This document shows positions 2,500-64,000 of a stretch of DNA of 64,000 nt, piece after piece (position 1 is the stretch's first letter; each line of letters opens with the position of its first letter). Position numbers and translations under genes: made by a program. The notes under the pieces are model-generated. The model had not been told where the DNA came from. It made no database searches and saw only the letters and a program-made list of their open reading frames with translations. The stretch is from contig OZ251242.1 of NCBI GenBank assembly GCA_965240325.2, positions 1 to 64,000 on the forward strand, given 5' to 3'. The DNA comes from Rebecca billardiae RCC1528. Its lineage: Eukaryota > Protista > Haptophyta.

Positions 2500-2518
2500 G
2501 CCGGTACTAAAATGAGAA

Positions 2519-11824: not shown

Positions 11825-11855
11825 AGCAATGCCCCCCCCAGGGGGGGGCATTGCT
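11825..11855. repeat. Perfect palindrome AGCAATG-C8-A-G8-CATTGCT
   Basis: 15-bp arms around a single A, read directly. Confidence 0.9.
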
Positions 11856-15894: not shown

Positions 15895-15941
<47 letters not shown>

Positions 15942-23786: not shown

Positions 23787-26700
23787 ATGGCCGCTGGGGC
23801 GGTGCTGCTCGCACTCGCCGCCCCGGCGATACACCCTGTGTTGTTAGGGCTGGCCAGCCCGTCCACGCCGGAAATACTCTTCTCCGGCGAGGCGCACACC
23901 TGTCTCCTCTACGCCGACGCGGGCCTCAAGTGGTGCGCGCCCAGCCGCGCGCGCGCGCCCCGCGCCCGCGGCGCCGCGGCAGTTTGCCCACCACCGGCCG
24001 CTCCCGCCCGGCGCGCGCGCGCGCAGCTTCGGGCAAAACTCGGCCGGCCAGCTCGGGCAGGATGACTCCGACAACCGCGGAGACGATCCGGGCGAGCTCG
24101 GCCTCGCGCTGCCCTACATCAACCTGCCCACCGGCCTGTTTGCCACCGACATCTCCGCGGGAGGCTCGCACACGTGCGCCGTGCTCGGCGACAACACGCT
24201 GCGCTGGTGCGCGCGGCGGGGCGCGCCGGGCCGGGGCGCGCCGCGCCGCGCGAATGACGGGGCACACGCGCGCGACCGCGCGGAGGCGGGGCGTGGGCGC
24301 CGTGCACGGCTACGTTGCGCGCCGGCGCGCACGCGCCGGCCGGGCGCGGCTGAGCGCGCGCCCGCTCGCGCGCGCGGCTGCCGCGCGCCGCAGTTGGGGC
24401 ACGGCGACGGACGGGCGTCTCGGCGGTGGGAACGGGGACGACGTGGGCGACGGCGCCGTCAACTCGCTTGGCATGGGCGACGCGCTCGTCGCCGTCAACC
24501 TCGGCGCGGGCGCGAGCGTGCTGAGCGTGCGCGCCTCGGCCGCCAGCACGTGCGCGCTGCTCACGATCGGTGCGACCACCGGCCTCAAGTGCTGGGGCGA
24601 CAACAAGGCGGGCTCGCTGGGGTACGGGGACAACGCCGACAGAGGCGTGAGCGCCGCCGTCATGGGCGACAGCCTGCCCTTCGTCGCGCTGGGCACGGGC
24701 GACGTGATCAGCAGCTTCGACACGCACCTGGGCGGCCACGTGTGCGTGGTGCTCACCTCGGGCGCAGTCAAGTGGTGCGCGCACGCGCGCACGCACGCAC
24801 GCACGCACGCACGCGCGCACGCAACGCGCGCGCGCGCGCACGCACGCGCGCGCGCGCACGCGCCGTCGGCGGAGTGCGGCTGACCCGCGCGCGGCGCGCG
24901 TGGCGCTGCGGTGTGCGCCTGCGTGCCCGCGCGCCAGCTGGGGCGAGGGCTCGGCGGGCCAGCTCGGCACGGGCCAGAAGCAGGACGTGGGCACCGGCGC
25001 CGCCGACATGGGGAACAGCCTCGCCGCCGTCAACCTCGGCACCGGCGTCACGGCCGACCTCGTCGTGACCACGATCTCGAACACGTGCGCGCGCGTGGGC
25101 TCGGGCAAGCTCAAGTGCTGGGGCGAGGGCTGGACGGGCATGTCGGGCGGCATCCTCGGGTACGGCGACAAGGCGGACCGCTCGATCACCAACGACTTTG
25201 GCGACGCGCTGCCCGAGGTGGACCTGGGCGCGGGGCGCACCGTCGTGCGTGTGCAGATGGGGCTCAAGCACGCGTGCGCGCAGCTGGACGACGGCACGCT
25301 CAAGTGGTGCGCGCGGCAGCCGGGCGCAGCCACGGCGGCGGCGCGCGCTGCCCGGCGCGCCCGCGTCCCACACACACGCCCTGACGGTGCGGTGCACGCC
25401 CTGACGGTGCCTCTCCCGCCCGCCCCGCGCCCCCCCGCGCCACCCTGCGCGCGCGCACTCCGCAGCTGGGGCGCCGGCACGAGCGGCGAGCTCGGCACGG
25501 GCGACAACGACTCGCGCGGCGACGACCCGAACGAGATGGGCGACACGCTGCCGACGGTACAGCTGGGCAGCGGCCGCACCGCCATCCGCGTGAGCGCGGG
25601 CGACGGCTTCTCGTGCGCGCTGCTCGACGACCTCAACCTCAAGTGGTGCGCGGCCGCGCGCGGGCGGGCGCGCGCGCGCAGGGCAGGGCAGGGCAGGGGC
25701 GGAGACGGGGGGCCGGGCGGGGTCGCGCCGGGTGCGCCGCGGTTCCGGGGCGTGCCGGCCACGCGCGCCTGTCGAGGCTGGCGCGCGCCGCGCTGGGCAA
25801 GAGCGTGCGCCGAGGCCGCTGCGCCGCGCGGCCCGGGCCGCTGTGGCGCCCGCCGAGCCGGGCTGACTGACGCGAGAGGCGCGCCCGCGACCACGCACCG
25901 CGCGCCGCGCGGCGCGCAGCTGGGGCGACGCGGCCACGGGCCAGATCGGCAGCGGCTCGCGCACAGACATTGGCAAGTCGCCCGGCGAGATGGGCGACGC
26001 GCTGCCGCCGGTCGGGCTGCCGCAGCCGCCGCCGAGCCCGCCGCCGAGCCCGCCGCCGTCGCCACCGCCGTCGCCGCCGCCGCCGAGCCCGCCGCCGAGC
26101 CCGCCATCACCGCCGCCGTCGCCACCGCCGCCCAGCCCGCCGCCTTCCCCGCCGCCGTCCCCGCCGCCTTCCCCGCCGCCGTCTCCGCCGCCGTCGCCGC
26201 CGCCGGGCCCGCCGCCGTCGCCGCCGCCGAGCCCGCCGCCGAGCCCGCCGCCGAGCCCGCCGCCGTCGCCGCCGCCGAGCCCGCCGCCGAGCCCGCCGCC
26301 GAGCCCGCCGCCGAGCCCGCCGCCGTCGCCGCCGCCGAGCCCGCCTCCGAGCCCACCGCCGTCGCCGCCGCCGAGCCCGCCGCCCTCACCGCCGCCGCCG
26401 AGCCCGCCGCCCAGCCCCCCGCCGGCGCCGCCGCCTAGCCCGCCGCCCTCACCACCGCCGCCGAGCCCGCCGCCGTCGCCGCCGCCGAGCCCGCCGCCGA
26501 GCCCGCCGCCGAGCCCGCCGCCGTCGCCGCCACCGAGCCCGCCGCCGAGCCCGCCGCCGAGCCCGCCGCCGTCGCCGCCGCCGAGCCCGCCGCCATCACC
26601 GCCGCCGCCGAGCCCGCCGCCGAGCCCGCCGCCGTCGCCGCCCCCTAGCCCGCCGCCGAGCCCGCCACCCAGCCCGCCGCCGAGCCCGCCGCCGAGCCCG

Positions 26701-29700
26701 CCACCATCACCGCCGCCGCCGTCGCCGCCGCCGTCGCCGCCGCCCTCCCCGCCGCCGTCGCCTCCGCCGAGCCCGCCGCCCTCGCCGCCGCCGAGCCCGC
26801 CGCCGAGCCCGCCGCCCTCGCCGCCTCCGCCGGCTCCGCCGCCGAGCCCGCCGCCGAGCCCGCCGCCGAGCCCGCCGCCGAGCCCGCCGCCGTCGCCGCC
26901 GCCGAGCCCGCCGCCATCACCGCCGCCGCCAAGCCCGCCGCCCAGCCCGCCGCCGTCGCCGCCCCCTAGCCCGCCGCCGGGCCCGCCGCCCTCGCCGCCG
27001 CCGAGCCCGCCGCCTTCGCCGCCGCCGAGCCCGCCGCCCTCGCCGCCGCCGAGCCCGCCGCCCTCGCCGCCGCCGAGCCCGCCGCCCTCGCCGCCGCCGA
27101 GCCCGCCGCCAAGCCCGCCGCCCTCGCCGCCGCCGCCGTCGCCGCCGCCCAGCCCGCCGCCGAGCCCGCCGCCCTCGCCTCCGCCGAGCCCGCCGCCGAG
27201 CCCGCCGCCGAGCCCGCCGCCGAGCCCACCGCCGAGCCCGCCGCCCTCACCTCCACCGAGCCCGCCGCCGAGCCCGCCGCCCTCGCCGCCTCCGCCGAGC
27301 CCGCCGCCGAGCCCGCCGCCGAGCCCGCCGCCGAGCCCGCCACCGAGCCCACCGCCGAGCCCGCCGCCCTTGCCGCCGCCGAGTCCACCGCCCTCGCCAC
27401 CGCCGCCGTCGCCGCCGCCGAGCCCGCCGCCATCGCCGCCGCCGAGCCCGCCGCCGAGCCCGCCGCCCAGCCCGCCGCCGAGCCCGCCGCCGAGCCCGCC
27501 ACCGTCGCCGCCGCCGCCGTCGCCGCCGCCGTCGCCGCCTCCGAGCCCGCCGCCCTCGCCCCCGCCGAGCCCGCCGCCGAGCCCGCCGCCGAGCCCTCCG
27601 CCGAGCCCGCCGCCGAGCCCGCCACCCAGCCCGCCACCGAGCCCGCCGCCGAGCCCGCCGCCGAGCCCGCCGCCCTCACCTCCGCCGAGCCCTCCGCCGA
27701 GCCCGCCGCCCTCGCCGCCTCCGCCAAGCCCGCCGCCGAGCCCGCCGCCGAGCCCTCCGCCGAGCCCGCCGCCGAGCCCGCCGCCGAGCCCGCCGCCATC
27801 GCCGCCGCCGAGCCCGCCGCCCTCCCCGCCGCCGCCCAGACCGCCGCCCAGTCCGCCGCCTTCGCCGCCGCCCAGTCCGCCGCCGGGCCCGCCGCCGTCG
27901 CCGCCGCCGAGCCCGCCGCCGAGCCCGCCGCCGTCGCCGCCGCCGCCAAGCCCGCCGCCGAGCCCGCCGCCGAGCCCGCCGCCATCGCCGCCGCCGAGCC
28001 CGCCGCCGTCGCCACCGCCCTTGCCGCCGCCAAGCCCGCCGCCAGCGCCGCCACCGAGCCCGCCGCCGAGCCCGCCGCCCAGCCCGCCACCCTCGCCGCC
28101 TCCGCCGAGCCCACCGCCGAGCCCGCCGCCGAGTCCTCCGCCATCGCCGCCGCCGTCGCCGCCGCCGATTCCGCCGCCCAGCCCGCCGCCGAGCCCGCCG
28201 CCCAGCCCCCCACCGAGCCCACCGCCCTCACCGCCGCCGTCGCCGCCGCCGCCGAGCCCACCGCCGAGCCCGCCGCCGAGCCCGCCGCCGAGCCCGCCCC
28301 CGAGCCCGCCTCCGAGCCCGCCGCCCTCACCGCCGCCGTCGCCGCCGCCGAGCCCGCCGCCGAGCCCGCCGCCCGCACCACCGCCGTCGCCACCGCCGAG
28401 CCCGCCGCCGAGCCCGCCGCCCAGCCCACCGCCATCACCGCCGCCACCGAGCCCGCCGCCGAGCCCGCCGCCGTCGCCGCCGCCGTCGCCACCGCCCTCA
28501 CCACCGCCCAGCCCGCCGCCGAGCCCGCCGCCAAGCCCGCCACCACCGTCACCGCCGCCGAGCCCGCCGCCTAGCCCCCCGCCCAGGCCGCCGCCGTCAC
28601 CGCCGCCGTCGCCGCCGCCCAGCCCGCCGCCGAGCCCCCCGCCGCTGCCGCCGCCATCGCCGCCGCCGAGCCCACCGCCATCGCCACCGCCGTCGCCTCC
28701 GCCGCCGAGCCCGCCCCCCAGCCCGCCGCCGAGCCCGCCGCCGTCGCCACCGCCCAGCCCGCCGCCGAGCCCGCCGCCAAGCCCGCCGCCATCCCCACCG
28801 CCGTCTCCGCCGCCTTCCCCGCCGCCCTCCCCGCCGCCGTCGCCGCCGCCGTCGCCGCCGCCGTCGCCGCCTCCGCCAAACACTCCGCCGAGCCCGCCGC
28901 CGAGCCCGCCGCCCAGCCCGCCCCCGGCGCCGCCCCCTTCTCCGCCGCCGAGCCCGCCGCCGTCGCCGCCGCCGTCGCCGCCGCCCAGCCCGCCACCAAG
29001 CCCGCCGCCGTCGCCACCGCCATCGCCGCCGCCGCCAAGCCCGCCGCCGAGCCCGCCGCCCAGCCCGCCACCGTCGCCGCCGCCAAGCCCGCCGCCGAGC
29101 CCGCCGCCGTCGCCGCCACCGAGCCCGCCGCCATCGCCACCGCCCAGCCCGCCGCCCAGCCCGCCACCGAGCCCCCCGCCGTCGCCACCCCCATCGCCGC
29201 CGCCGCCGTCGCCGCCGCCTTCGCCGCCCCCCAGCCCACCGCCGAGTCCGCCGCCGAGCCCTCCGCCACCCTCACCGCCTCCCAGCCCGCCGCCGAGCCC
29301 GCCGCCGGGCCCGCCGCCGTCGCCGCCGCCCAGCCCGCCGCCGTCCCCACCGCCGTCTCCGCCGCCGTCGCCGCCGCCGCCATCGCCGCCGCCCAGCCCG
29401 CCACCGTCGCCGCCGCCCAGCCCGCCGCCGAGCCCGCCGCCGTCGCCGCCACCGAGCCCGCCGCCATCGCCACCGCCCAGCCCGCCGCCCAGCCCGCCAC
29501 CGAGCCCCCCACCGTCGCCACCCCCATCGCCGCCGCCGCCGTCGCCGCCGCCTTCGCCGCCTCCCAGCCCACCGCCGAGTCCGCCGCCGAGCCCTCCGCC
29601 ACCCTCACCGCCTCCCAGCCCGCCGCCCAGCCCGCCGCCGGGCCCGCCGCCTTCGCCGCCGCCCAGCCCGCCGCCGAGCCCACCGCCCTCGCCACCGCCT

Positions 29701-32700
29701 CCCAGCCCGCCGCCCAGCCCGCCGCCGAGCCCACCCCCGTCGCCGCCGCCATCGCCGCCGCCGAGCCCACCGCCGAGCCCGCCGCCCTCGCCACCGCCGC
29801 CGAGCCCGCCGCCCAGCCCGCCCCCGTCGCCGCCGCCCTCGCCGCCGCCGAGCCCGCCGCCCTCGCCGCCGCCCTCGCCGCCGCCTTCGCCGCCGCCCTC
29901 AGCGCCGCCCAGCCCGCCGCCCAGCCCGCCACCGTCGCCGCCTCCGCCGAGCCCGCCGCCGAGCCCGCCGCCGAGCCCACCACCGTCGCCACCCCCGTCG
30001 CCGCCACCGAGCCCGCCTCCCAGCCCGCCGCCGAGCCCGCCGCCTCCAAGCCCGCCGCCAAGCCCTCCACCCTCGCCGCCGCCAAGCCCGCCTCCAAGCC
30101 CGCCGCCAAGCCCTCCACCCTCGCCGCCGCCAAGCCCACCTCCAAGCCCGCCGCCAAGCCCTCCACCCTCGCCGCCGCCAAGCCCACCGCCGAGCCCGCC
30201 GCCGAGCCCACCGCCGTCACCACCGCCGTCCCCACCGCCCAGCCCGCCACCGAGCCCGCCGCCGAGCCCGCCGCCGTCGCCTCCGCCACCAAGCCCGCCG
30301 CCTTCGCCGCCGCCGTCCCCGCCGCCTTTCCCGCCGCCGTCGCCGCCGCCGACCCCTCCGCCGAGTCCGCCGCCCTCGCCGCCACCGCCGAGCCCGCCGC
30401 CGTCGCCGCCGCCGTCCCCACCGCCCTCGCCGCCTCCGAGCCCGCCGCCGAGCCCCCCGCCAAGCCCGCCCCCCAGCCCGCCACCGAGCCCGCCGCCGAG
30501 CCCGCCGCCGAGCCCGCCGCCGGCCCCGCCGCCGTCGCCGCCGCCGTCGCCGCCGCCGAGCCCGCCGCCGTCGCCGCCGCCGAGCCCACCGCCGAGCCCG
30601 CCCCCCAGCCCGCCGCCATCGCCGCCCCCTCCGAGCCCGCCGCCAAGCCCACCGCCGTCGCCGCCGCCGAGCCCGCCGCCCAGCCCGCCACCCAGCCCGC
30701 CGCCCAGCCCGCCTCCATCGCCGCCTCCCCCGAGCCCGCCGCCGTCCCCGCCGCCGATCCCGCCGCCGTCGCCTCCGCCCAGCCCGCCGCCTAGCCCGCC
30801 ACCGAGCCCACCGCCGGCGCCGCCACCGTCGCCTCCACCGAGCCCGCCGCCGTCGCCGCCGCCGTCGCCGCCCCCGCCTAGCCCTCCGCCGAGCCCGCCG
30901 CCGAGCCCGCCGCCGAGCCCGCCGCCGAGTCCGCCGCCATCGCCACCGCCACGCCCGCCGCCATCGCCACCGCCGTCGCCACCACCAAGCCCGCCACCGA
31001 GTCCACCGCCGTCGCCGCCACCGCCGAGCCCACCACCGAGCCCCCCACCAAGCCCACCACCGAGCCCACCACCAAGCCCGCCACCGAGCCCACCGCCGTC
31101 TCCTCCGCCTTCCCCGCCGCCGTCCCCGCCGCCGTCCCCGCCACCTTCCCCGCCGCCGTCACCGCCACCGTCGCCGCCCCCGAGCCCCCCGCCCAGCCCG
31201 CCGCCGGCGCCGCCGCCCTCGCCACCACCATCGCCACCACCGTCGCCGCCGCCCTCACCTCCTCCGCCCAGCCCTCCGCCGAGCCCGCCACCCAGCCCTC
31301 CGCCGAGCCCGCCGCCGAGCCCGCCGCCGAGCCCGCCGCCGAGCCCGCCGCCGTCGCCGCCGCCGTCCCCGCCGCCGAGCCCGCCGCCGAGCCCGCCGCC
31401 TTCGCCACCGCCGAGCCCGCCACCCAGCCCGCCACCCAGCCCGCCGCCGTCGCCGCCGCCGCCCAGCCCACCGCCCAGCCCGCCACCTTCTCCGCCGCCT
31501 TCCCCGCCACCGAACCCGCCGCCGTCACCGCCGCCGTCGCCACCGCCCTCACCACCGCCCTCGCCGCCGCCCAGCCCGCCGCCGAGCCCGCCGCCCGCGC
31601 CACCGCCATCGCCACCACCGTCGCCGCCACCGTCGCCGCCGCCATCTCCGCCGCCGCCGAGCCCACCGCCGAGCCCCCCACCGAGCCCGCCGCCGAGCCC
31701 GCCACCTTCGCCTCCGCCGAGCCCGCCGCCGTCGCCGCCGCCGTCGCCGCCGCCGAGCCCGCCGCCCAGCCCCCCGCCCAGTCCGCCACCTTCGCCACCG
31801 CCGAGCCCGCCACCAAGCCCGCCGCCCAGCCCGCCGCCGTCACCGCCGCCACCCAGCCCGCCACCTAGCCCGCCGCCTTCTCCGCCGCCTTCCCCGCCGC
31901 CGAGCCCGCCGCCGAGCCCACCGCCATCTCCCCCGCCTTCCCCGCCGCCTTCCCCGCCGCCGTCGCCGCCGCCGTCGCCGCCGCCGTCGCCGCCGCCGTC
32001 GCCGCCGCCGAGCCCGCCGCCGAGCCCGCCTCCGACACCGCCGCCCTCGCCGCCACCATCGCCACCACCGTCGCCGCCGCCGTCGCCTCCGCCGCCAAGC
32101 CCTCCGCCGAGCCCGCCGCCGAGCCCGCCGCCGAGCCCGCCGCCGAGCCCGCCGCCAAGCCCGCCGCCGTCCCCGCCGCCCTCGCCGCCGCCCTCGCCGC
32201 CGCCGTCCCCGCCGCCCAGCCCGCCGCCATCCCCACCGCCCAGCCCGCCGCCGAGCCCTCCGCCGAGCCCGCCGCCGTCGCCGCCGCCGCCCAGCCCACC
32301 GCCCAGCCCTCCGCCCTCGCCACCGCCCAGCCCGCCGCCGAGCCCCCCACCGTCACCGCCGCCCTCTCCACCGCCGTCACCGCCACCTTCACCGCCGCCG
32401 AGCCCGCCGCCAAGCCCGCCTCCATCGCCGCCACCATCGCCGCCACCATCACCACCACCGTCGCCGCCGCCGTCGCCACCTCCGCCCAGCCCGCCGCCGA
32501 GCCCGCCGCCGAGCCCGCCGCCGAGCCCGCCGCCGAGCCCACCGCCAAGCCCGCCGCCATCGCCGCCACCGTCGCCGCCGCCCTCGCCGCCGCCGAGCCC
32601 GCCGCCCAGCCCGCCGCCGTCGCCACCGCCGAGCCCGCCACCGAGCCCGCCTCCGAGCCCGCCGCCATCACCACCGCCGCCTAGCCCACCGCCCAGCCCG

Positions 32701-53700: not shown

Positions 53701-56700
53701 TCGCCACCGCCGAGCCCGCCACCGTCGCCGCCGCCCAGCCCGCCCCCGAGCCCGCCACCGGCGCCGCCGCCGTCGCCGCCACCGTCGCCCCCGCCGAGCC
53801 CACCGCCGAGTCCACCGCCGTGGCCACCACCGTCGCCGCCGCCGTCGCCGCCGCCGTCGCCGCCGCCGTCGCCGCCGCCGCCGAGCCCGCCGCCGAGCCC
53901 GCCGCCGAGCCCGCCGCCAAGCCCGCCGCCAAGCCCGCCGCCAAGCCCGCCACCGTCGCCACCGCCACGCCCGCCGCCGTCGCCGCCGCCCTCGCCTCCA
54001 CCGCCAAGCCCGCCTCCGAGCCCGCCGCCTTCGCCGCCGCCGTCGCCACCGCCGAGCCCGCCGCCGTCACCGCCGCCCTCACCTCCGCCGCGGCCGCCAC
54101 CCACGCCACCGCCGAGCCCGCCACCGTCGCCACCGCCAAGCCCGCCCCCGAGCCCGCCGCCGGCGCCGCCGCCGAGCCCGCCGCCCTCGCCACCGCCGAG
54201 CCCACCGCCGTCGCCGCCGCCGAACCCGCCGCCGTCGCCGCCGCCGTCGCCGCCGCCGTCGCCGCCACCGTCGCCGCCGCCGCCGAGCCCGCCGCCGAGC
54301 CCGCCACCGAGCCCGCCGCCGAGCCCGCCGCCGAGCCCGCCCCCACGGCCGCCGCCGTCGCCGCCGCCGAGCCCACCGCCATCGCCGCCGCCGTCGCCTC
54401 AGCCGCCGAGCCCGCCGCCCAGCCCGCCGCCCAGCCCGCCGCCGCGCCCGCCACCCTCGCCACCGCCGAAGCCGCCGCCGTCCCCGCCCCCATCGCCACC
54501 GCCGAGCCCGCCCCCGAGCCCTCCGCCGCGTCCGCCGCCGTCGCCGCCGCCGAGCCCGCCGCCGTCGCCGCCACCGTCGCCACCGCCGCCGAACCCGCCG
54601 CCAAGACCACCACCCAGCCCGCCGCCGAGCCCTCCGCCATCCCCGCCTCCAAGCCTGCCGCCGTCGCCACCGCCGTCCCCGCCGCCCGGCCCGCCGCCGA
54701 GCCCGCCGCCGTCCCCGCCTCCGAGTCCGCCACCGAGCCCACCGCCGAGCCCACCACCGTTGCCACCACCGTCGCCACCGCCGGGCCCGCCGCCGTCACC
54801 GCCGCCGTCGCCGCCACCTCCGAGCCCGCCTCCAAGCCCGCCACCCAGCCCGCCGCCGAGCCCGCCGCCATCCCCGCCTCCAAGCCTGCCGCCGTCGCCG
54901 CCGCCGTCCCCGCCGCCCAGCCCGCCGCCGAGCCCGCCGCCGTCGCCACCGCCCAGCCCGCCGCCGAGCCCTCCGCCGTCGCCGCCGCCATCGCCGCCGC
55001 CCAGCCCACCGCCTTCGCCGCCGCCCAGCCCACCGCCGCCGAGCCCGCCCCCGAGCCCGCCGCCACGCCCGCCGCCGTCGCCACCGCCCAGCCCGCCGCC
55101 GAGCCCTCCGCCGTCGCCGCCGCCATCGCCGCCGCCCAGCCCACCGCCTTCGCCGCCGCCCAGCCCACCGCCGCCGAGCCCGCCCCCGAGCCCGCCGCCA
55201 CGCCCGCCGCCGTCGCCACCGCCCAGCCCGCCGCCGAGCCCTCCGCCGTCGCCGCCGCCATCGCCGCCGCCGAGCCCACCGCCATCGCCGCCGCCCAGCC
55301 CACCGCCGCTGAACCCGCCCCCCAGCCCGCCGCCACGCCCGCCGCCGTCGCCACCGCCCAGCCTGCCGCCGAGCCCTCCGCCGCTGCCGCCGCCGAGCCC
55401 GCCGCCGTCGCCCCCGCCCTCGCCTCCACCGCCGAGCCCACCCCCGAGCCCGCCGCCGGTGCCGCCGCCCATACCCCCACCATCGCCCCCGCCGAGCCCA
55501 CCGCCGAGCCCACCGCCGGTGCTGCCACCATCGCCCCCACCGAGCCCACCGCCTTTGCCGCCGCCGTCGCCGCCGCCTCCGAACCCAGCGCCGCGCCCAC
55601 CGCCCAGTCCACCGCCGAGCCCGCCGCCGAGACCGCCACCGTCGCCGCCGCCGAGCCCGCCGCCGCGAGAGCCGCCGCGGCCGCCGCCATCGCCGCCGCC
55701 AAGCCCGCCGCCCACTGTGTCGCCGGTGCCCCCGCCGAGCCCGCCGCCTTCGCCGCCGCCGGCACTGCCGCCAGCGCTGCCGCCACTGCCGCCGCCACCG
55801 CCTCGCATGGAGCCGTTCACGCCACCGTCACCGCCCAGCCCGCCACCCTCGCCGCCGCCAAGCCCGCCGCCGTCGCCACCGCCCAGCCCACCACCAAGCC
55901 CGCCGCCATCGCCGCCGCCATCGCCGCCGCCATCGCCACCGCCGAGCCCGCCGCCGAGCCCGCCGCCGAGCCCGCTACCCTCACCACCGCCAAGCCTGCC
56001 ACCATTGCCTCCGCCTAGTCCACCACCAAGCCCGCCACCGGCGCAGCTGCCTTCGCCGCCGCCATCGCCACCGCCGAGCCCGCCACCCTCGCCGCCGCCA
56101 AGCCTGCCGCCATTGCCACCGCCCAGTCCACCACCAAGCCCGCCGCCATCGCCGCCGCCATCGCCGCCGCCATCGCCACCGCCGAGCCCGCCACCCTCAC
56201 CAACGCCAAGCCTGCCGCCATTGCCTCAGCCCAGTCCACCACCAAGCCCGCCGCCGTCGCAGCCGCCATCGCCGCCGCCATCGCCACCGCCGAGCCCGCC
56301 GCCGAGCCCGCCGCCGAGCCCGCCACCCTCACCACCGCCAAGCCTGCCGCCATTGCCTCCGCCCAGTCCACCACCAAGCCCGCCGCCATCGCCGCCGCCA
56401 TCGCCGCCGCCATCGCCACCGCCGAGCCCGCCGCCGAGCCCGCTACCGTCGCCACCGCCGAGCCCGCCGCCGCGCGAGCCGCCACGGCCGCCGCCATCGC
56501 CGCCGCCAAGCTCGCCGCCCACTGTGTCACCGGTGCCCCCACCGAGCCCGCCGCCTTCGCCGCCGCCGGTACCGCCGCCCACGCCGCCGCCACTGCCGCC
56601 GCCGCCGCCTCGCATGGAGCCGTTCACGCCGCCGTCACCGCCGAGCCTGCCGCCGAGCCCGCCACCCTCGCCACCGCCAAGCCTGCCGCCATTGCCTCCG

Positions 56701-59700
56701 CCTAGTCCACCGCCAAGCCCGCCGCCATCGCCGCCGCCATCGCCGCCGCCATCGCCACCGCCGAGCCCGCCGCCGAGCCCGCCGCCGAGCCCGCCACCCT
56801 CACCACCGCCAAGCCTGCCGCCATTGCCTCCGCCCAGTCCACCACCAAGCCCGCCGCCATCGCCGCCGCCATCGCCGCCGCCATCGCCACCGCCGAGCCC
56901 GCCGCCGAGCCCGCCGCCGAGCCCGCTACCGTCGCTGCCGCCAAGCCCGCCGCCATTGCCACCACCCAGTCCACCACCAAGCCCGCCGCCGGCGCAGCTG
57001 CCATCGCCACCGCCGAGCCCGCCACCATTGCCTCCGCCCAGTCCACCACCAAGCCCGCCGCCATCGCCGCCGCCATCGCCACCGCCGAGCCCGCCACCCT
57101 CGCCACCGCCAAGCCTGCCGCCATTGCCGCCGCCCAGACCACCACCAAGCCCGCCGCCATCGCCGACGCCATCGCCGCCGCCATCGCCACCGCCGAGCCC
57201 GCCGCCGAGCCCGCCGCCGAGCCCGCTACCGTCGCCGCCGCCAAGCCCGCCGCCATTGCCACCGCCGAGCCCGCCGCCGAGCCCGCCGCCGAGCCCGCTA
57301 CCCTCACCACCGCCAAGCCTGCCACCATTGCCTCCGCCTAGTCCACCACCAAGCCCGCCACCGGCGCAGCTGCCTTCGCCGCCGCCATCGCCACCGCCGA
57401 GCCCGCCACCCTCGCCGCCGCCAAGCCTGCCGCCATTGCCACCGCCCAGTCCACCACCAAGCCCGCCGCCATCGCCGCCGCCATCGCCGCCGCCATCGCC
57501 ACCGCCGAGCCCGCCACCCTCACCAACGCCAAGCCTGCCGCCATTGCCTCAGCCCAGTCCACCACCAAGCCCGCCGCCGTCGCAGCCGCCATCGCCGCCG
57601 CCATCGCCACCGCCGAGCCCGCCGCCGAGCCCGCCGCCGAGCCCGCCACCCTCACCACCGCCAAGCCTGCCGCCATTGCCTCCGCCCAGTCCACCACCAA
57701 GCCCGCCGCCATCGCCGCCGCCATCGCCGCCGCCATCGCCACCGCCGAGCCCGCCGCCGAGCCCGCTACCGTCGCCACCGCCGAGCCCGCCGCCGCGCGA
57801 GCCGCCACGGCCGCCGCCATCGCCGCCGCCAAGCTCGCCGCCCACTGTGTCACCGGTGCCCCCACCGAGCCCGCCGCCTTCGCCGCCGCCGGTACCGCCG
57901 CCCACGCCGCCGCCACTGCCGCCGCCGCCGCCTCGCATGGAGCCGTTCACGCCGCCGTCACCGCCGAGCCTGCCGCCGAGCCCGCCACCCTCGCCACCGC
58001 CAAGCCTGCCGCCATTGCCTCCGCCTAGTCCACCGCCAAGCCCGCCGCCATCGCCGCCGCCATCGCCGCCGCCATCGCCACCGCCGAGCCCGCCGCCGAG
58101 CCCGCCGCCGAGCCCGCCACCCTCACCACCGCCAAGCCTGCCGCCATTGCCTCCGCCCAGTCCACCACCAAGCCCGCCGCCATCGCCGCCGCCATCGCCG
58201 CCGCCATCGCCACCGCCGAGCCCGCCGCCGAGCCCGCCGCCGAGCCCGCTACCGTCGCTGCCGCCAAGCCCGCCGCCATTGCCACCACCCAGTCCACCAC
58301 CAAGCCCGCCGCTGGCGCAGCTGCCATCGCCACCGCCGAGCCCGCCACCATTGCCTCCGCCCAGTCCACCACCAAGCCCGCCGCCATCGCCGCCGCCATC
58401 GCCACCGCCGAGCCCGCCACCCTCGCCACCGCCAAGCCTGCCGCCATTGCCGCCGCCCAGACCACCACCAAGCCCGCCGCCATCGCCGACGCCATCGCCG
58501 CCGCCATCGCCACCGCCGAGCCCGCCGCCGAGCCCGCCGCCGAGCCCGCTACCGTCGCCGCCGCCAAGCCCGCCGCCATTGCCACCACCAAGCCCGCCAC
58601 CGGCCCAGCTGCCATCGCCGCCACCGTCGCCGCCGCCGAGCCCGCCGCCGCGCGAGCCTCCACGGCCGCCGCCATCGCCGCCGCCAAGCCCGCCGCCGAG
58701 CCCGCCACCCTCACCACTGCCAAGCCTGCCGCCATTGCCTCCGCCCAGCCCACCACCGAGCCCGCCGCCATCGCCGCCGCCATCGCCGCCGCCATCGCCC
58801 CCGCCGAGCCCGCCGCCGAGCCCGCCACCATCGCCGCCACCGAGCCCGCCGCCCAGCCCGCCCCCGATGCCGCCGCCATCGCCGCCGCCATCGCCACCGC
58901 CGTCGCCGCCGCCCTCACCACCTCCGCCTAGCCCACCGCCCAGCCCGCCGCCGAGCCCGCCGCCGAGCCCGCCGCCGAGCTCGCCTCCGAGCCCGCCGCC
59001 GAGCCCGCTACCGTCGCAGCCGCCAAGCCCGCCGCCATTGCCACCACCAAGCCCGCCACCGGCCCAGCTGCCATCTCCGCCGCCATCGCCCCCGCCGAGC
59101 CCGCCACCGTCGCCGCCGCCGAGCCCGCCGCCGCGCGAGCCGCCACGGCCGCCGCCATCGCCGCCGCCAAGCCAGCCGCCGAGCCCGCCACCCTCACCAC
59201 CGCCAAGCCTGCCGCCATTGCCTCCGCCCAGCCCACCACCGACCCCGCCGCCATCGCCGCCGCCATCGCCCCCGCCGAGCCCACCGCCGTTCCCGCCTCC
59301 GAGCGCGCCGCCGAGCCCGCCGCCACGCCCGCCGCCGAGCCCGCCGCCCAGCCCGCCGCCGTCGCCCACACCGTCACCGCCGCCGAGCCCGCCGCCCTCG
59401 CCGCTGCCCAGCCCACCGCCGCCGCCACCGCCGCGCCCGCCGCCGAGCCCGCCGCCGAGCCCGCCGCCGAGCCCGCCGCCCTCGTCCCCGCCGCCGCTCC
59501 TGCCGCCGCCGCCACGCACGGAGCCCTTCACGCCGCCGGCGCGCCCGCCGCTTCCGCCGCCGAGCCCCCCGCCCGCGCCGCCGCCCGCGCCGCCGCCCTC
59601 TCCGCCGCCCTCGCCGCCGCCCGCGCCGCCGCCGCCGCCCGCGCCGCCCCCGCTCGCGCCGCCGCCGTCGTTCCCGCCCTGGGCCTCGCTCAGCTCGCTG

Positions 59701-62700
59701 CTGCTCTCGGCCGAGCCCACGGCTGTGCCGCTCGGCGGCGGCGCGGCGGCGGGCGGCGGCGCGGCGGCGCGCGTGCTCACGCTGAGCGGCGTCGGCTTCG
59801 GCCGCGCGGTGGGCGCGGTCCGCTCGTACTGCGCGGTGTACGCCGCCGCGCCTGGCGCCGCCGCGCCGTCCGACGACGCGATCATCGCCGGCCTCGCGCC
59901 CGCCGCCACCTCGGCCGCGGCGGTGCTCTCGGACGGGTCGGCGAGCTGCGAGCTGCCGGGCGGGCTGGGCGAGGGCTCGTACGCGCTGGCGCTGTGGCTG
60001 GGCGGCGCGGGGGGCGGCGAGGCGCACGCGGCGCCGACGCTGTTCGGCGCGCCCGTGCTCCGCGTCTTCGACCCGTCCGCGCTCGCCGTGCGCGCGCTCG
60101 GCCCCGCCGCCGGCCCGGTGGGCGGCGGCACCGTCGTCACGCTCGAGGGGCAGGGCTGGGACCGCGGGCTGCTGCGCGCGCGCGGGCTGTCGCTGTGCTG
60201 CGTGCTGCCGGCGCTGGGCGCGGGGTGCGCGGCGGGCGCGACGGTGCTGCCGCCGCGCAACGGCACGAGCCGCGCCGCGTGCACCCTGCCCGCGCTCGGC
60301 GCGCCCGGCGCGCTGAGCGTCGAGCTCGGCCTCTGGTCGGAGGCCAGCATGGCCGCCAGCATGGCCGCCGCAGCCGGCGGCGCCAACGGCACGAACGGCA
60401 CGGCGGGCGGCAACGGCACGTCCGCCGCCGCCGCGGGCCTGCTCGGCCGCAGCGCGTCGGCGGCGCGCTTCCACGCGTACGCGCCGCCCAACGTGAGCTC
60501 CGTGCTCCCCGCGTCAGGCCGGGCTCTGCACACGCGCGTCACGGTGCAAGGCGGCGGCTTTGCCGAGCTGGCCGCGGCCGGGCTGGGCCACCTGCTCGCC
60601 TTCGCGTTCGGCCGGGCGCAGGCGGCGGCCGCGCCGCTCGAGGTGGATCCGGGCGGGGAGTGGGCGGTGGTGCTCGCGCCGCACGGCCCGCCCGGCCCGG
60701 CGCAGCTCCTCGTCGCGCTCAACGGCCAGCAGTTTGCGCCCGCGCGGCGCGGCGGGCCGGGCGCGGTGTACTTTGAGCTCACGGACGGCGCGCACGCGCC
60801 CGTGCTCGAGGGGGCGAGCTTCGTCGCGGGGAGCTCGGGGGAGAGCGGCGGGCTGCGCGCGGCGGGCGTGGAGCTGCTGCTGCTCCGCTTCGACGCGGGG
60901 CGCGAGACCGACCGCGCCGGGATGGGCGGCGCTGTGGGCGACTGCGCGTCGGTGCTGGACGCGCGCACGCTCGCGCTCGTCACGGGCGACGGCGGCGGCG
61001 GCGGCGGCTCGGCGGGCGCGCGCGCCGCCGCCTCGGCCGCGTGCTACTGGCCGGACGCGTCGACGCTCGCGGTGCGGCTGGGCGCGGGCGCGGCGGTGCG
61101 GCCGGGCGACGTGGTCGGCGTGCGCGAAGGCGCGGTGCGCCCCGCGGAGTGCGCCTCCGCCCCCGCCCTCTGCGCCACGCTCCGTCTCAACAGCTCCACA
61201 GTGGCCATCGACGCAGACGCGCCGTGCGGCGCGCTCGGCGCGTGCCCGGAGCACGTGGCGGCGCTGCGCGGGCCGCGCGCGGTGTCGTCGTGCGCGGGCG
61301 CGAGCATCGCGCTCGACGGCAGCGGCTCGAGCGGCGGCGGCGGCGCGTTCGGCCTGCAGTTCGAGTGGCGGCTCGTGCGCGCACTCTCGGACGCAGAGGG
61401 CGCGGCGCAGCTGGACGCGGCGCTGCGCGCGCTGCCGCCGAGCGCCGCCGCGCCCACGCTGCGAGGGCTGCCCGCCGCGCCGCCCGCGGGCTCGGCCGGG
61501 TACACGTTCGCGATGCGCGTGCGCGCGAGCTTCGACGCGCTGGCCGAGCCGGGCGCCGCCGAGCCCGGCGCGTGGTCAGCGCCCGCCTTCCAAGCCGTGG
61601 CGCGCGCGCCGGGCGCGCCGCCGGCCGTCGACATCGACGGCCCGGCCGAGCGCGCGGTGCGGCCGGACGCGCGCACGACGCTGCTGGCGCGCGCGAGCCT
61701 CGCGCCGTGCTGGGCGGGCGGCGCGCGCGTGGCGTTCGCGTGGAGCCTGCTCGGCGTCTTCGACGGCGCGGGCGCGCCCCTCAACGACAGCGCCGCGCAG
61801 CCGTGGCCCGAGCTGCCGCCGCCGAGCGCGGGCGGCGCCTCGCTGTCGCTGCCGCCGCACGCGCTGGCCGCCGGCCGCCGGTACGAGCTGCGCGTGGCGG
61901 CGGCGATGGCGGAGGCGCCCGCGGGCGCGGCGGCGGCGGAGGCGCGGTGCGTGCTCGTCGTGCGCACGCTGCCGCTCGCCCTCCGCCTCGCCGACGCCGA
62001 GCGCCGCGTCGACGCGTCCGCGCCGCTCGAGGTGGACGCCTCGGCCTCGCGCGACCCAAACGTGCCGCCTGCGGGTGCGGGGGGCTCGCACCTGGTCTGG
62101 GCGTGGGACGTGCGGCGCGCGAGCGCGCCCGCGGGCGCGGGCGGCGGCGGCGTCTCCGCGCTGGGCCCGCCGCTCGCGCTGCCCAACGGCTCGCGCACCG
62201 CCTCTCCCGTGCTCCGCCTCCCGGGCGGCGCGCTCGGCGTCGGCTGGTACGTCGCGTCGGTCACGCTCAGCGCGCCTGGCCTCCCGCCCGCGCGCGCCTC
62301 GGTGGCGGTGGAGGTGGTGAACGGGACGGGCGGGCCGCCGCTGCCGACGCTCTCGCTCGCGCACCTCGGCGGCGCCGCCTCCAACCCGGACTGGCACGCG
62401 CTCGCGCCCAGCTCGGGGCGCGTCGTGCTGCAGGCGAGCCTCGACGCCGCCTCGCGCGCGCGCGCCGCGCGCGGCGAGGAGTCGTTCGCCTTCGAGTGGC
62501 GCGCGTACACGCTGGGCGCGGGCGGCGCGCGGCTGGGCGCCGGGCTCGAGCTCGCGGACGCGGGCGGCGTGACGACGACGGGCGCGGCGCTGCCCACGCT
62601 CGCCTTCCGCCCGGGCGCCCTCTCCGGCGGCGAGACGTACGTCTTTGAGCTCACCGTGCGCGGCTCAGCCTCGCGCGAGGCGCGCGCGGCCGTGCGCGTG

Positions 62701-64000
62701 CGCGTCAACCTGCCGCCGTACGGCGGCGGGCTGGCGGTGCGGCCGGCGGCGGGCGAGGCGCTGACCACGCAGTTCGAGTGCGAGGCGGCGGGCTGGCTCG
62801 ACGACGTGGAGGACGGCGCGGACGCGCTGCCCCTCAGCTACGCGTACGCGCACGCGCTCGCGGTCGACGACGACGGCGGCGACGACGGCGGCGACGACGC
62901 GCCCGGCGGCGGCGGCGCGCCGTCGCAGGCGCTCGGCCGCGGCGGCGCGGGCGTGGCGGTGCTGCGCGGCGTGCGGCTGCCGGGCGGGAACCGCACGCTC
63001 ACGGTCGTCGTGTCCGACGCGTGGGGCGGCGCGGCGTCGGCGCGCGCGCCCGTGGCCGTGCGCCCGCCGCCGCCGAGCGCCGCGCTCGGCGTAGCGCTGC
63101 GCGCGCTCGCGCAGCCGGGCGGCGGCCCGGTGCCGCCGCCGCTGCTCGGAGGCGGCGCCGCCGTCGCGAACGCGAGCACCGTCGCCGAGCTGGTCGCGGC
63201 GTACGGCGCGCTGCTCGACGAGGCGCGCGCGGCGGTCGCGCGCGCGGACGCGCCCGACGCGAAGCGGCTCGTCGGCCTGTTGGGCTGGCTGCTGCAGTAC
63301 GCGGGCGCGCTCGGCGCGCTCGCGCGCGCGGGCGGCGACGTGTCGGATCTGGGCGGGCTGGTGGTGGCGCTGCTGAACGTGACGGCGGGCGCGGCGGCGG
63401 TCGCGCCGCCGACGGCGGAGGCGCGCGCGCAGTGGGCCGCGGCGCTCGTCGCCGCGCTCGGCGGGCTCGGCGGCGCCGCGCTGCCGTGCGCCGCGCGCGC
63501 GTCCGCGCTCGCGCAGGCGGCGCAGCTCGTCGACGGCGCCGCGGCCGACGCGTCCGGCCTCGACGAGCCCACCGGACGCCTCGCCTTCTCCGCGCTCGGC
63601 GCGGCGCTCGCCGGCGCGGCCGTGGCGTGCGGCGTGGACGGCGCCGCGGCGCTCGAGGCGGCGGGCGCGGACGGCGCGGCGGCGCTCGCGCGCGCGCTGC
63701 TCGCGCGCGCGGCGCCGTCCGAGCCGGCGCTGGCCCTCGTGTCTGCGCCGCTCAACCTGACGGCCGCGCGGCTGCACGCGCCCACGCAGCTCGCGCTGCC
63801 GCTGTGGCTGCCCGGCGCGGGCGGCGCGGGCGGGATGCTCACGCCGCCCGCGCTCGCCGCCGCGCTCTCGCCGAGCGGCGCGCTGCTCGCCGTCGACGTG
63901 GTGCTCCTCTCCGCTGGCGCGAGCGCGCGCACGGCTGGCGCGCTCGGCGGCGGCGGCGCCTCTGCAGACGGCGTGGAGGGCGGCGCGCTCGCGTTGGGTA
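23787..64000 (+). CDS. Giant extracellular protein, 3'-incomplete, >13,100 aa: signal peptide + RCC1-type propeller + Ser-Pro3/4 stalk + IPT/TIG-like + REJ (polycystin-1-like). join(23787..23932,24027..24206,24394..24774,24938..25306,25466..25645,25920..>64000)
   Basis: Five GT-AG introns each restore a (K/R)C(W/F)G motif. Exon 6 reads in frame +1 from CWGDAATGQIG...EMGDALPPVGLPQ into PPPSPPPS and stays in register at every line checked. The in-frame ATG at 25990 yields no terminated ORF in the track, implying no stop before 64000. Confidence 0.9.
23870..26020 (+). other. RCC1/BLIP-II repeat domain, 7 blades
   Basis: Repeats such as SAGGSHTCAVLGDNTLRCWG, CFGQNSAGQLGQDDSDNRGDDPGELG and CWGAGTSGELGTGDNDSRGDDPNEMGDTLPTVQLG. 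Exons give half+1+2+2+1+half = 7 repeats. Confidence 0.9.
26026..59679 (+). repeat. 33.6-kb coding array of (AGC/TCG)-CCG-CCG-CCG encoding ~11,200 aa of extensin/HRGP-like Ser-Pro3/4
   Basis: 12/15-nt units. Variation is concentrated at synonymous third positions of Pro codons (CCG/CCC/CCA/CCT) and among Ser codons (AGC/AGT/TCN), which identifies the Pro/Ser frame as the coding one. Confidence 0.95.
59690..60790 (+). other. About three IPT/TIG-like Ig-fold domains
   Basis: SAEPTAVP...VLTLSGVGF; ALGPAAGPVGGGTVVTLEGQGW; NVSSVLPASG...RVTVQGGGF...LLVALNGQQF. Confidence 0.65.
61250..63065 (+). other. REJ (receptor for egg jelly/polycystin-1) module
   Basis: IALDGSGS...QFEW; LSLPPHALAAGRRYELRV; LEVDASASRDP; LAFRPGALSGGETYVFELTV; VNLPPYGGGLAVRPAAGEALTTQFECEAAGWLDD...PLSY; VVVSDAWGG. 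Confidence 0.8.

What the first reader, a model, noticed from the sequence alone, without database searches (positions are those of the whole stretch)
23787..64000. Hidden >13,000-aa surface protein: RCC1 propeller head on a micrometre-scale polyproline stalk attached to a polycystin-1-like base
Seen: one spliced reading frame, absent from the ORF track, giving a hydrophobic leader, 7 RCC1-type repeats, ~11,200 aa of Ser-Pro3/4, ~3 IPT/TIG-like domains, a REJ module and a helical region, still open at 64000. About 13 of ~17 Asn in the C-terminal part sit in N-x-S/T sequons, supporting secretion. Established: Ser-Pro(n) repeats are hydroxylated and glycosylated and form polyproline-II rods at ~0.31 nm per residue; REJ modules precede GAIN/GPS and membrane segments in polycystin-1-family proteins; algal agglutinins use a head-on-Pro-shaft design with far shorter shafts. 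Inference: a fully extended stalk would be ~3.5 micrometres, comparable to a microalgal cell. This suggests a single-molecule antenna, tether or hair that couples distant binding by the propeller (prey, mate, substrate) to a polycystin-like mechanosensory anchor. I know of no described protein with this combination at this scale.
Basis: partly seen in the sequence, partly recalled or inferred. Interest (0 to 1): 0.95.

Follow-up and report, generated by a model that had tools for sequence, protein, structure and literature searches.

The report
Giant stalked REJ-type surface receptor gene
The window holds one very large, so far unannotated algal gene for a surface protein: a propeller-shaped head on a roughly 11,200-residue Ser-Pro rod (up to about 3.5 micrometres if stretched out), joined to a sea-urchin-REJ/polycystin-1-type base. 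It is the extreme member of a gene family that also exists, overlooked, in the haptophyte Diacronema lutheri.

Summary
Six exons (five GT..AG introns, each splitting the Cys codon of an RCC1 blade) give a stop-free reading of 13,112 codons that is still open at 64000. It encodes:
- a leader;
- a closed 7-blade RCC1 propeller;
- an 11,211-residue Ser-Pro3/4 rod;
- IPT/TIG-like sandwiches;
- a REJ module (Pfam 8e-20; best fold match sea-urchin suREJ1, TM 0.63);
- a helical bundle where relatives have the start of GAIN.

The array is not a simple satellite. Its codons are scrambled, and block copies differ mostly at third positions (428 synonymous vs 36 replacement codon pairs in one block family). 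So frame +1 is under protein-level selection.

Relatives (39-40% identity) continue with GPS about 115 residues on, then membrane helices and an EF-hand. They show no Pfam PLAT or PKD_channel match. All five relatives whose DNA I checked carry a Pro-rich rod upstream. In D. lutheri a single 5,921-codon ORF holds leader, 1,870-residue rod and base, and the public gene model leaves the rod out.

The closest described design is Chlamydomonas MST3/Mstax, so the concept is not unprecedented. This architecture, lineage and rod length are undescribed. Unchecked notes of this scan report many shorter paralogues in the same genome. I obtained no transcript or read evidence. The function (tethered hair or mechanosensor) is inferred.

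The parts
23787..23932 (+). Exon 1: start codon, hydrophobic leader (about 23 aa) and the N-terminal strand that closes the last propeller blade
   Evidence: In-frame stop six codons upstream.
23933..25919 (+). Head region. Exons 2-5 are 24027-24206, 24394-24774, 24938-25306 and 25466-25645. The five introns are 23933-24026, 24207-24393, 24775-24937, 25307-25465 and 25646-25919. All are GT..AG and phase 2 in the Cys codon of L-K-C|W-G.
   Evidence: Pfam RCC1 on single exons.
25920..26025 (+). Start of exon 6: the last half RCC1 blade, which runs directly into the rod
26026..55300 (+). Distal rod. About 9,750 aa of nearly pure SPPP/SPPPP (98-99% Ser+Pro). It is a mosaic of higher-order blocks of 780, 828 and 1,266 nt at 80-90% identity.
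55301..59658 (+). Proximal rod. About 1,450 aa, 84-94% Ser+Pro. Recurring non-Ser/Pro landmarks are REPPRPPP x5, PPPPR(M/T)EPFTPP x4, AQLPSPPP x6 and TVSPVPPP x3. There is a 1,323-nt higher-order repeat, which includes a 1,055-nt exact duplicate at 55,934 and 57,257.
59700..60800 (+). About three IPT/TIG-like beta sandwiches
   Evidence: Pfam TIG 1.5e-4. AF2 model of 59920-61719 has pLDDT 78 and its best PDB match is plexin A1 IPT3-6, E 1.5e-8. Relatives score TIG at 1e-22 to 1e-30 at the aligned place.
60801..61830 (+). Conserved Cys-rich linker and the N-terminal part of the REJ module
   Evidence: Invariant Cys, Trp and Gly columns in alignment A2.
61831..63084 (+). REJ module (tandem beta sandwiches)
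   Evidence: Pfam PF02010 at 7.9e-20. AF2 pLDDT 76, pTM 0.75. Foldseek best match suREJ1 Q26627, E 1.4e-34, TM 0.63, followed by PKDREJ, PKD1L1 and PKD1L2.
63082..63999 (+). Helical bundle of about 210 aa, then the start of a beta domain, read as GAIN subdomain A and the beginning of subdomain B. The frame is still open at the window end.
   Evidence: AF2 helices at residues 528-736 and strands from 744. In relatives the Pfam GPS domain starts about 83 aa and the cleavage motif lies about 115 aa beyond the aligned end.

Best explanation
One gene encodes a secreted, membrane-anchored giant glycoprotein. From the N-terminus it has a signal peptide, a disulfide-rich 7-blade RCC1-type propeller (the ligand-binding tip), and an 11,211-residue Ser-Pro3/4 rod.

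The rod is presumably hydroxylated and O-glycosylated into a polyproline-II glycofibril with a contour length of up to about 3.5 micrometres. It has two parts:
- a bare distal part of about 9,750 aa;
- a proximal part of about 1,450 aa with recurring non-Pro motifs that may bind partner proteins.

After the rod come IPT/TIG domains, a REJ module and a GAIN-type domain. By homology, the protein continues beyond the window with a GPS cleavage site, a few membrane helices and a cytoplasmic EF-hand. The expected total is about 13,600-14,100 aa.

It is the longest member of a lineage-specific family of 'head on a rod on a REJ-GPS base' receptors, in which rod length sets how far the head stands from the membrane.

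Most likely working, which is inferred: the rod is a tether or hair. Binding at the head, or drag on the rod, pulls on the REJ/GAIN-GPS joint, as in polycystin-1 and adhesion GPCRs, and this is coupled to Ca2+ on the inside. The architecture and the selection on the frame are shown. Glycosylation, cleavage, location and signalling are inferred.
For: Gene model:
- A stop-free spliced frame of 13,112 codons with five canonical introns, all at the same blade position.
- The only signal-like leader lies before the head. The base has no leader of its own, yet it has 13 of 17 Asn in sequons, 18 Cys and an ectodomain fold. It therefore needs the upstream start to enter the secretory path.

The rod is coding and under selection in frame +1:
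- Third-position identity reaches 0.51 at best at any lag, against a 0.41 background.
- Both Ser codon families are used (AGC 1,371, TCG 770).
- Between higher-order block copies, differences by codon position are 99/88/449, with 428 synonymous and 36 replacement codon pairs in the block family at 41-45 kb.
- The block mosaic at 80-90% identity looks like old tandem duplications rather than an assembler artefact.

Base:
- Pfam REJ 8e-20.
- Fold match to suREJ1, PKDREJ and PKD1L1.
- 557 relatives. The best, at 2e-90 to 3e-78, show TIG-REJ-GPS followed by hydrophobic segments; three of the six scanned (both D. lutheri proteins and P0007) also score Pfam EF-hand pair above its cut-off, and P0001 scores a single EF-hand below it.

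Conserved design:
- D. lutheri JAGTXO010000041.1 has one uninterrupted ORF of 5,921 codons holding a leader, a 1,870-aa SP3 rod, a short second rod and KAG8459354.1.
- Four more relatives from three other samples have Pro-rich rods that run up to the contig start.
- The proximal motif PPPPRTEPF is shared with relative L002.

Precedents for free or core PPII rods at 0.31 nm per residue are MST3 (PMC11015965) and TLP-4 (PMC11725842).
Against: - No transcript, proteomic or raw-read evidence. One run held only a 214-nt exact piece, and the head region found no run.
- The array length rests on the assembly alone.
- GPS, membrane helices and the stop codon are outside the window.
- Proline hydroxylation and glycosylation are known from the green lineage and diatoms, not shown for this organism.
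- The organism is not identified.
- Frames +2 and -3 are also open over about 9,800 codons, so openness alone is weak evidence. The codon-position test carries the argument.
- The relatives' membrane part shows no polycystin channel or PLAT by Pfam, so the signalling mechanism is uncertain.
Confidence: 0.62

Rival explanations
1. The DNA is real, but the locus is not expressed as one chain. The head plus a short piece of rod, and the TIG-REJ base, would be separate products (internal promoter, alternative splicing of the array). Alternatively the giant copy is a decaying, unexpressed paralogue of the shorter family members.
For: No RNA evidence was obtained. The public D. lutheri gene model, built with RNA-seq support, starts after the rod. 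Other notes of this scan put typical stalks at 1,400-3,800 aa, so this copy is an outlier.
Against: - Replacement changes are strongly depleted in frame +1 along the array.
- There is no stop or frameshift over 38 kb.
- The base has no leader of its own, although it is an N-glycan-sequon-rich ectodomain.
- In D. lutheri the leader, rod and base form one ORF. That genome was repeat-masked before gene calling (PMC8379373), which would explain the missed rod.
Confidence: 0.2
2. The array length is an assembly artefact. A shorter Ser-Pro array was expanded or mis-joined, perhaps merging two paralogous genes (the head of one, the base of another).
For: - The region is 34 kb of 85% G+C repeat.
- A 1,055-nt exact duplicate exists at 55,934 and 57,257.
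- Only 45% of 31-mers are unique.
- The genome holds many paralogues with similar rods (notes).
- No reads could be laid on the array.
Against: 75-81% of 101-151-mers are unique, so long accurate reads can place them. Block copies are 80-90% identical, not near-identical, and differ mainly synonymously. The frame is kept through every junction, which random mis-joins would break two times in three.
Confidence: 0.12
3. The gene model is right, but the protein is a passive coat or matrix component. The rod would act only as spacer or bulk (a brush that keeps grazers, viruses or surfaces away, or a shed glycofibril), with no signalling role for the base.
For: TLP-4-type free glycofibrils occur in natural waters and their producers are unknown (PMC11725842). 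GPS cleavage would allow the head-rod-REJ fragment to be shed. The relatives' membrane part has no recognisable channel.
Against: The conserved REJ-GPS-membrane-EF-hand base in relatives and the variable ligand-type heads in the paralogue notes (RCC1, LRR, lectin) suggest receptors rather than filler.
Confidence: 0.25

Closest known systems
Chlamydomonas reinhardtii MST3 / Mstax (Cre06.g309951), core of the ciliary mastigoneme (PMC11015965; bioRxiv 10.1101/2024.12.24.630281)
   Same: A single giant chain (8,572 aa) with a signal peptide, a binding-type N-terminal module, a Pro-rich polyproline-II region several thousand residues long that spans a filament of about 0.9 micrometres, Ig-like domains next to the membrane, and a polycystin-family membrane anchor. 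Its bare N-terminal PPII stretch forms a free glycosylated rod at about 0.31 nm per residue.
   Different: - MST3 has C-type lectins rather than RCC1.
- Its rod is 42 complex P13/P11(XXP)3 repeats sheathed by MST1, not about 2,800 plain SPPP units.
- Its base is a PKD2-like channel domain completed by SIP, not TIG-REJ-GAIN/GPS.
- It is from the green lineage.
- No sequence homology between the two was shown here.
Sea-urchin suREJ1 and the polycystin-1 family (PKDREJ, PKD1L1, PKD1L2, PKD1)
   Same: The REJ module followed by the helical start of GAIN. This is the best structural match (suREJ1 E 1.4e-34, TM 0.63 over 805 residues). The Pfam REJ match is 8e-20. Relatives have GPS at the expected distance. 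suREJ1 also carries a ligand-binding head above REJ-GPS.
   Different: - There is an 11,211-aa rod between head and base.
- The head is RCC1 rather than lectin, EGF or PKD repeats.
- The relatives' membrane part shows no Pfam PLAT or PKD_channel match.
- The relatives' cytoplasmic tail carries an EF-hand pair.
- The membrane part of this gene lies outside the window.
Diacronema lutheri KAG8459354.1 and KAG8462819.1 ('EF-hand domain-containing protein')
   Same: Closest named homologues of the base. The representative of KAG8459354.1's 90%-identity cluster matches at 40% identity, and KAG8462819.1 at 38%. The DNA upstream of KAG8459354.1 holds a leader and a 1,870-aa SPPP rod in the same uninterrupted ORF.
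   Different: The D. lutheri rod is six times shorter. There is no RCC1 head: the leader runs straight into the rod. About 12 extra roughly 100-aa repeats lie between the rod and TIG. The public annotation omits the rod altogether.
Plant extensins / LRX chimeras and Chlamydomonas sexual agglutinins (own knowledge)
   Same: Ser-Pro3-5 repeats that form glycosylated polyproline-II rods, and a head-on-shaft design.
   Different: No Tyr cross-link motifs (0 Tyr in 11,211 aa). The shaft is 10-50 times longer. The protein is anchored in the membrane through a REJ-GPS base rather than in a wall.
TLP-4 glycofibril from pond water (PMC11725842)
   Same: A micrometre-scale fibril whose only protein is one linear chain of tetrapeptide repeats (S/T-P-x-x or P-S/T-x-x) with a 12.4 A rise. 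Its gene and producer are unknown.
   Different: TLP-4 has one dihydroxyproline per repeat and a very thick glycan shell. There is no evidence that it comes from this family.

Membership tests
Polycystin-1 / REJ family (PKD1, PKD1L1-3, PKDREJ, suREJ) | REJ module in the ectodomain | tested here: met
   Pfam PF02010 at 7.9e-20. The AF2 model's best Swiss-Prot fold matches are suREJ1, PKDREJ, PKD1L1 and PKD1L2.
Polycystin-1 / REJ family | GAIN domain with a GPS autoproteolysis motif just before the first membrane helix | tested here: inconclusive
   A helical bundle and the start of a beta domain are in the window. The GPS itself would lie about 115 aa past 64000. Relatives have Pfam GPS there.
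Polycystin-1 / REJ family | PLAT/LH2 domain after the first membrane helix, and an 11-helix body whose last six helices are channel-like | not testable with these tools
   This part is outside the window. In the closest relatives Pfam finds no PLAT or PKD_channel, and the PDB sequence search finds only calmodulin-like EF-hands. suREJ1 is a family member with a single helix, so absence would not exclude the wider family.
MST3/Mstax-type mastigoneme core | Repeats of P13...P11(XXP)3 that bind an MST1 sheath | tested here: not met
   The rod is 2,313 SPPP plus 157 SPPPP units with no Tyr. Only the proximal 1,450 aa carry other motifs.
MST3/Mstax-type mastigoneme core | PKD2-like membrane domain lacking S1, completed by SIP | not testable with these tools
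   The membrane part is outside the window. The relatives' membrane part shows no polycystin match by sequence.
Extensins (cell-wall HRGPs) | Ser-Pro3-5 repeats | tested here: met
Extensins (cell-wall HRGPs) | Tyr-containing cross-link motifs (YXY, VYK) | tested here: not met
   0 Tyr, 0 His and 3 Lys in 11,211 aa.
RCC1-like seven-blade propellers | Seven repeats of about 50-65 aa with the RCC1 consensus, closed by N- and C-terminal strands | tested here: met
   Pfam RCC1 is above gathering on exons 2 and 5 and weaker on exons 3 and 4. There are six full repeats plus split halves at the two ends. The spliced head itself was not folded, because the tool takes no spliced sequence by reference.
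Adhesion GPCRs | GAIN/GPS followed by a seven-helix class B2 domain | not testable with these tools
   Outside the window. Relatives show no Pfam 7tm_2 match.

The most novel reading that the evidence does not exclude
These genes encode single-molecule, micrometre-long glycosylated polyproline hairs. They would be the molecular identity of the fine non-tubular hairs or coat of pavlovophyte-type haptophytes. The family would use genetically fixed rod lengths (about 0.4 to 3.5 micrometres) to place different binding heads at defined heights above the membrane, each wired through a force-sensitive REJ-GAIN/GPS joint to Ca2+ signalling. This 13,000+-aa member would be the outermost 'whisker', reaching about a cell diameter.
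Probability: 0.15. Interest if true: 0.85.

Novelty: new variant of a known kind. Interest (0 to 1): 0.62.

Why it matters
If it is expressed as one chain, this would be the longest hydroxyproline-rich-type rod known to me. It is about 11,200 residues, several times any single Pro-rich stretch in MST3, and the protein would be among the largest known.

It also shows that the design 'rod on a polycystin-family base', so far known from one Chlamydomonas protein, occurs in a second, distant algal lineage. Here it comes with a different base (REJ-GPS) and interchangeable heads.

There is a practical point as well. Repeat masking made public annotation drop the rods, so database proteins of this family are headless and stalkless. 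The D. lutheri example shows this directly.

The family offers a natural length series for testing how polyproline-II glycofibrils behave as molecular rulers, tethers or force transmitters. It also gives candidate producers for orphan glycofibrils seen by cryo-EM in natural waters.

Tried and rejected
- The search for homologous proteins with the TIG-REJ part inside a 5,000-aa query, and with the neighbouring F-box ORF, both returned nothing. So this genome's proteins are not in that collection, and the organism could not be named.
- blastn of the window against the D. lutheri loci gave only array-to-array matches at 72-75%, which says nothing about species.
- The look-up of sequencing runs listed no run for the head and one weak holder for the base. 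Read laying on 59500-63999 gave a single exact 214-nt contig (61900-62113) and otherwise noise, so splice joints and array length could not be checked.
- The metagenome scan with the REJ part found no relative. The alignment was too diverse to be used as a query.
- Foldseek against the PDB returned only generic tandem Ig/FN3 arrays for the REJ model. The Swiss-Prot AlphaFold library was what resolved it.
- The Atlas search of a relative's membrane part gave only low scores.
- tblastn of the RCC1 head against the relatives' loci found nothing. Most of those contigs end inside the rod.
- I rejected the simple-satellite reading on the codon-position test.
- I rejected a green-algal extensin or agglutinin assignment because Tyr is absent and the nearest named homologues are haptophyte proteins.
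- The donor string GTGCGCG is too common in this G+C-rich DNA to be used to look for further introns.
- The spliced head was not folded or searched, because it has no single reference and I did not type it in.

Full report
**What is in the window**

The window is extremely G+C-rich: 61-78% outside the feature and 84-89% inside it. Frame +1 has no stop from 25867 to the last base, 12,711 codons. The ORF listing does not show this frame because it runs off the end.

Reading the three forward frames between 23300 and 26050 shows RCC1-type repeats that jump between frames. At each jump the sequence reads ...L-K-W-C-A in one frame and ...S-W-G in the next.
- The donor is always TG|GTGCGCG and the acceptor always CAG|C or CAG|T.
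- Splicing therefore restores L-K-C-W-G, the same motif seen in the two blade junctions that have no intron.
- The exons are 23787-23932, 24027-24206, 24394-24774, 24938-25306, 25466-25645 and 25920-63999+.
- Joined, they give 39,336 nt, an exact multiple of three, with no stop.
- The ATG at 23787 is the first after an in-frame stop.

**Anatomy of the product (13,112 aa inside the window)**

Leader. Residues 1-23 are the only strongly hydrophobic leader in the protein. No Phe follows the likely cleavage site, which by my own knowledge of haptophyte bipartite plastid signals argues for the secretory route rather than the plastid.

Head. Residues about 30-453 are one closing strand, six full RCC1 repeats of 60-66 aa and a final half repeat, i.e. 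a closed seven-blade propeller.
- It has two conserved Cys per blade, 14 in all.
- Single exons score above the Pfam RCC1 gathering cut-off: exon 2 at 27.8 bits and exon 5 at 28.6 bits, against 21.7.

Rod. Residues 455-11,665 contain 8,347 Pro and 2,539 Ser, with no Tyr, His or Cys.
- Units are 2,313 SPPP and 157 SPPPP. The SPPPP units most often lie 16 units apart.
- The distal ~9,750 aa are 98-99% Ser+Pro.
- The last ~1,450 aa drop to 84-94%. They carry recurring landmarks: REPPRPPP x5, PPPPR(M/T)EPFTPP x4, AQLPSPPP x6 and TVSPVPPP x3.

Base. Residues 11,666-13,112 are the membrane-proximal ectodomain.
- An AlphaFold model of 59920-61719 (pLDDT 78) shows tandem beta sandwiches. Its best PDB match is plexin A1 IPT3-6.
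- Pfam gives REJ at 7.9e-20.
- An AlphaFold model of 61501-63999 (pLDDT 76, pTM 0.75) has about 520 residues of beta sandwiches, a helical bundle of about 210 residues, and then new strands.
- Against Swiss-Prot AlphaFold models its best matches are sea-urchin suREJ1 (E 1.4e-34, TM 0.63 over residues 1-805), then PKDREJ, PKD1L1 and PKD1L2.
- 13 of 17 Asn are in N-x-S/T sequons, against 9% expected (P = 4e-11).

**Is the array a real coding sequence?**

Openness alone proves little here, because frames +2 and -3 are also open for about 9,800 codons. The decisive evidence is codon structure.
- TRF finds the 12-nt period at only 72% match.
- Pro uses CCG/CCA/CCC/CCT at 5,563/1,464/858/462. Ser uses both codon families, AGC 1,371 and TCG 770.
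- Third-position identity reaches 0.51 at best at any lag, against a background of 0.41.
- The array is a mosaic of sub-arrays with higher-order periods of 828, 1,266, 780 and 1,323 nt at 80-90% identity, separated by more diverged stretches.
- Between copies of these blocks the differences lie at codon position 3. At 41-45 kb the counts by position are 99/88/449, with 428 synonymous and 36 replacement codon pairs. The 828- and 1,266-nt blocks show similar ratios.
- Neutral decay would put two thirds of the changes at positions 1 and 2.

So frame +1 has been kept by selection on the protein through several rounds of block duplication.

This pattern also argues against an assembler artefact. 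In addition, 75-81% of 101-151-mers in the array are unique. One 1,055-nt exact duplicate (55,934 and 57,257) is the youngest block. The assembled length itself could not be checked against reads.

**One chain or several?**

No RNA evidence was obtainable. The indirect argument has two parts.
- The base is an N-glycan-sequon-rich, Cys-containing ectodomain without any leader of its own. The only leader is 11,600 residues upstream.
- A homologue in a public genome shows the same arrangement in one ORF (see below).

**Relatives**

An exhaustive HMMER search with 60400-63999 found 557 relatives, 14 of them below 1e-30. The best match at 39-40% identity over about 1,000-1,100 residues.
- They share TIG, REJ, sometimes an EGF, then GPS, then hydrophobic segments. 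Three of the six scanned also score Pfam EF-hand pair above its cut-off.
- Pfam finds no PLAT or PKD_channel in them.
- A PDB sequence search of one relative's C-terminal 1,050 aa finds only calmodulin-like EF-hands.
- The window end aligns about 83 aa before the relatives' GPS domain, about 115 aa before the cleavage motif and about 170 aa before the first hydrophobic segment. The relatives end 500-1,000 aa after that point.

The named relatives are two 'EF-hand domain-containing' proteins of the haptophyte Diacronema lutheri. [quoted passage not shown]

I fetched the DNA around five relatives.
- In D. lutheri JAGTXO010000041.1, the 5.6 kb just upstream of KAG8459354.1, where no gene is called, is an SPPP array in the same frame.
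- That frame is open for 5,921 codons. It reads: leader, 1,870-aa rod, a small domain, a 90-aa second rod, then the annotated protein.
- The public model starts after the rod and treats the second rod as an intron. This fits the repeat masking described in PMC8379373.
- Three contigs from two short-read runs, and a TARA metagenome scaffold, all have Pro-rich reading frames that run from the contig's first bases into the TIG-REJ gene. One of them shares the proximal motif PPPPRTEPF.

So the rod-TIG-REJ-GPS design was seen in every relative whose DNA I checked. Public protein sets miss the rods in each of these.

Unchecked notes of this scan list many further paralogues in this same genome, with RCC1, LRR or lectin heads on rods of about 1,400-3,800 aa. 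I could not read those loci. If the notes are right, the present gene is the extreme of a length series.

**Organism**

Not identified. Its proteins are not in the 15-billion-protein collection. The G+C content, the nearest named homologues and the shared rod design point to a pavlovophyte-like haptophyte. This is an inference.

**How it probably works**

Shown: the architecture, and the selection on the frame.

Inferred from established cases:
- Ser-Pro3/4 stretches are hydroxylated and O-glycosylated and form polyproline-II helices.
- Bare, Pro-dense stretches form free rods, while stretches with intricate non-Pro patterns bind partners (Dai et al., PMC11015965).
- MST3's 429-residue tip measures 146 nm against a theoretical 133 nm.
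- The TLP-4 fibril rises 12.4 A per tetrapeptide (PMC11725842).
- At 0.31 nm per residue, 11,211 residues give a contour length of 3.48 micrometres. This is a contour length, not necessarily a straight reach.

The polypeptide alone is 1.25 MDa. With green-alga-type glycans it would be several MDa, which is a rough inference.

The proximal decorated 1,450 aa may carry a sheath or dock to neighbours.

The REJ-GAIN/GPS joint is the part that, in polycystin-1 and adhesion GPCRs, is cleaved and responds to pulling. The relatives' cytoplasmic EF-hand suggests a Ca2+ link. I therefore favour a tethered hair or antenna whose head binds a ligand and whose base reports force. A passive coat or shed fibril is the main functional alternative.

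Giant genes missed by annotation have a precedent in haptophytes: PKZILLA-1, with a 136-kb transcript and 45,212 aa (bioRxiv 10.1101/2024.01.29.577497).

**Comparison with what is known, and verdict**

The nearest described system is MST3/Mstax. It shares the concept (giant rod plus polycystin-family anchor) but has a different head, rod grammar, base and lineage. It was the only paper in the library that combines polycystin, extensin and alga.

The base is a member of the REJ family by sequence and fold. Membership in polycystin-1 proper cannot be tested in this window and looks unlikely from the relatives. The rod fails the extensin cross-link criterion.

I file the finding as a new variant of a known kind.

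Noticed in passing
L003 (Diacronema lutheri JAGTXO010000041.1, record 69591-101406 reversed), locus nt 4051-21813: One uninterrupted ORF of 5,921 codons holds a leader, a 1,870-aa SPPP rod and the annotated KAG8459354.1. The public model begins after the rod and splices out a second 90-aa rod, so the deposited protein lacks about 2,100 N-terminal residues.
   Followed up: yes
window 15421-16989 (+): An ORF with an F-box (Pfam F-box-like 2.9e-11). It has no near-identical protein in the large protein collection, which is why the organism could not be named.
   Followed up: partly
window 6244-7491 (+) / 6262-7452 (-): Another note of this scan calls this a giant-virus-type primase-polymerase. 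Pfam at E <= 0.01 found nothing in either strand's ORF. I did not examine it further.
   Followed up: partly
window 1-4000: G+C is 61-64% here against 70-78% in the following 20 kb. I found no explanation. Only the 2789-3655 (-) ORF was scanned, and Pfam found nothing in it.
   Followed up: no
window 55300-59658: The membrane-proximal end of the rod is the least pure and carries the youngest duplication (1,055 nt exact, lag 1,323). The distal part is purest. This gradient may say something about where the array grows and where partners bind.
   Followed up: partly
L003 nt 26110-27509: In D. lutheri a Glyco_transf_29 (sialyltransferase-type) gene lies about 4 kb downstream of the stalked-receptor gene. 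This may be coincidence.
   Followed up: no
L006/L007 (TARA Oceans metagenome scaffold and a second assembly): A lower-G+C (58%) relative has a differently patterned Pro-rich rod (PPFAPPPPLPP-type units) upstream of TIG-REJ. Rod 'grammar' therefore varies between lineages while the base is kept.
   Followed up: partly
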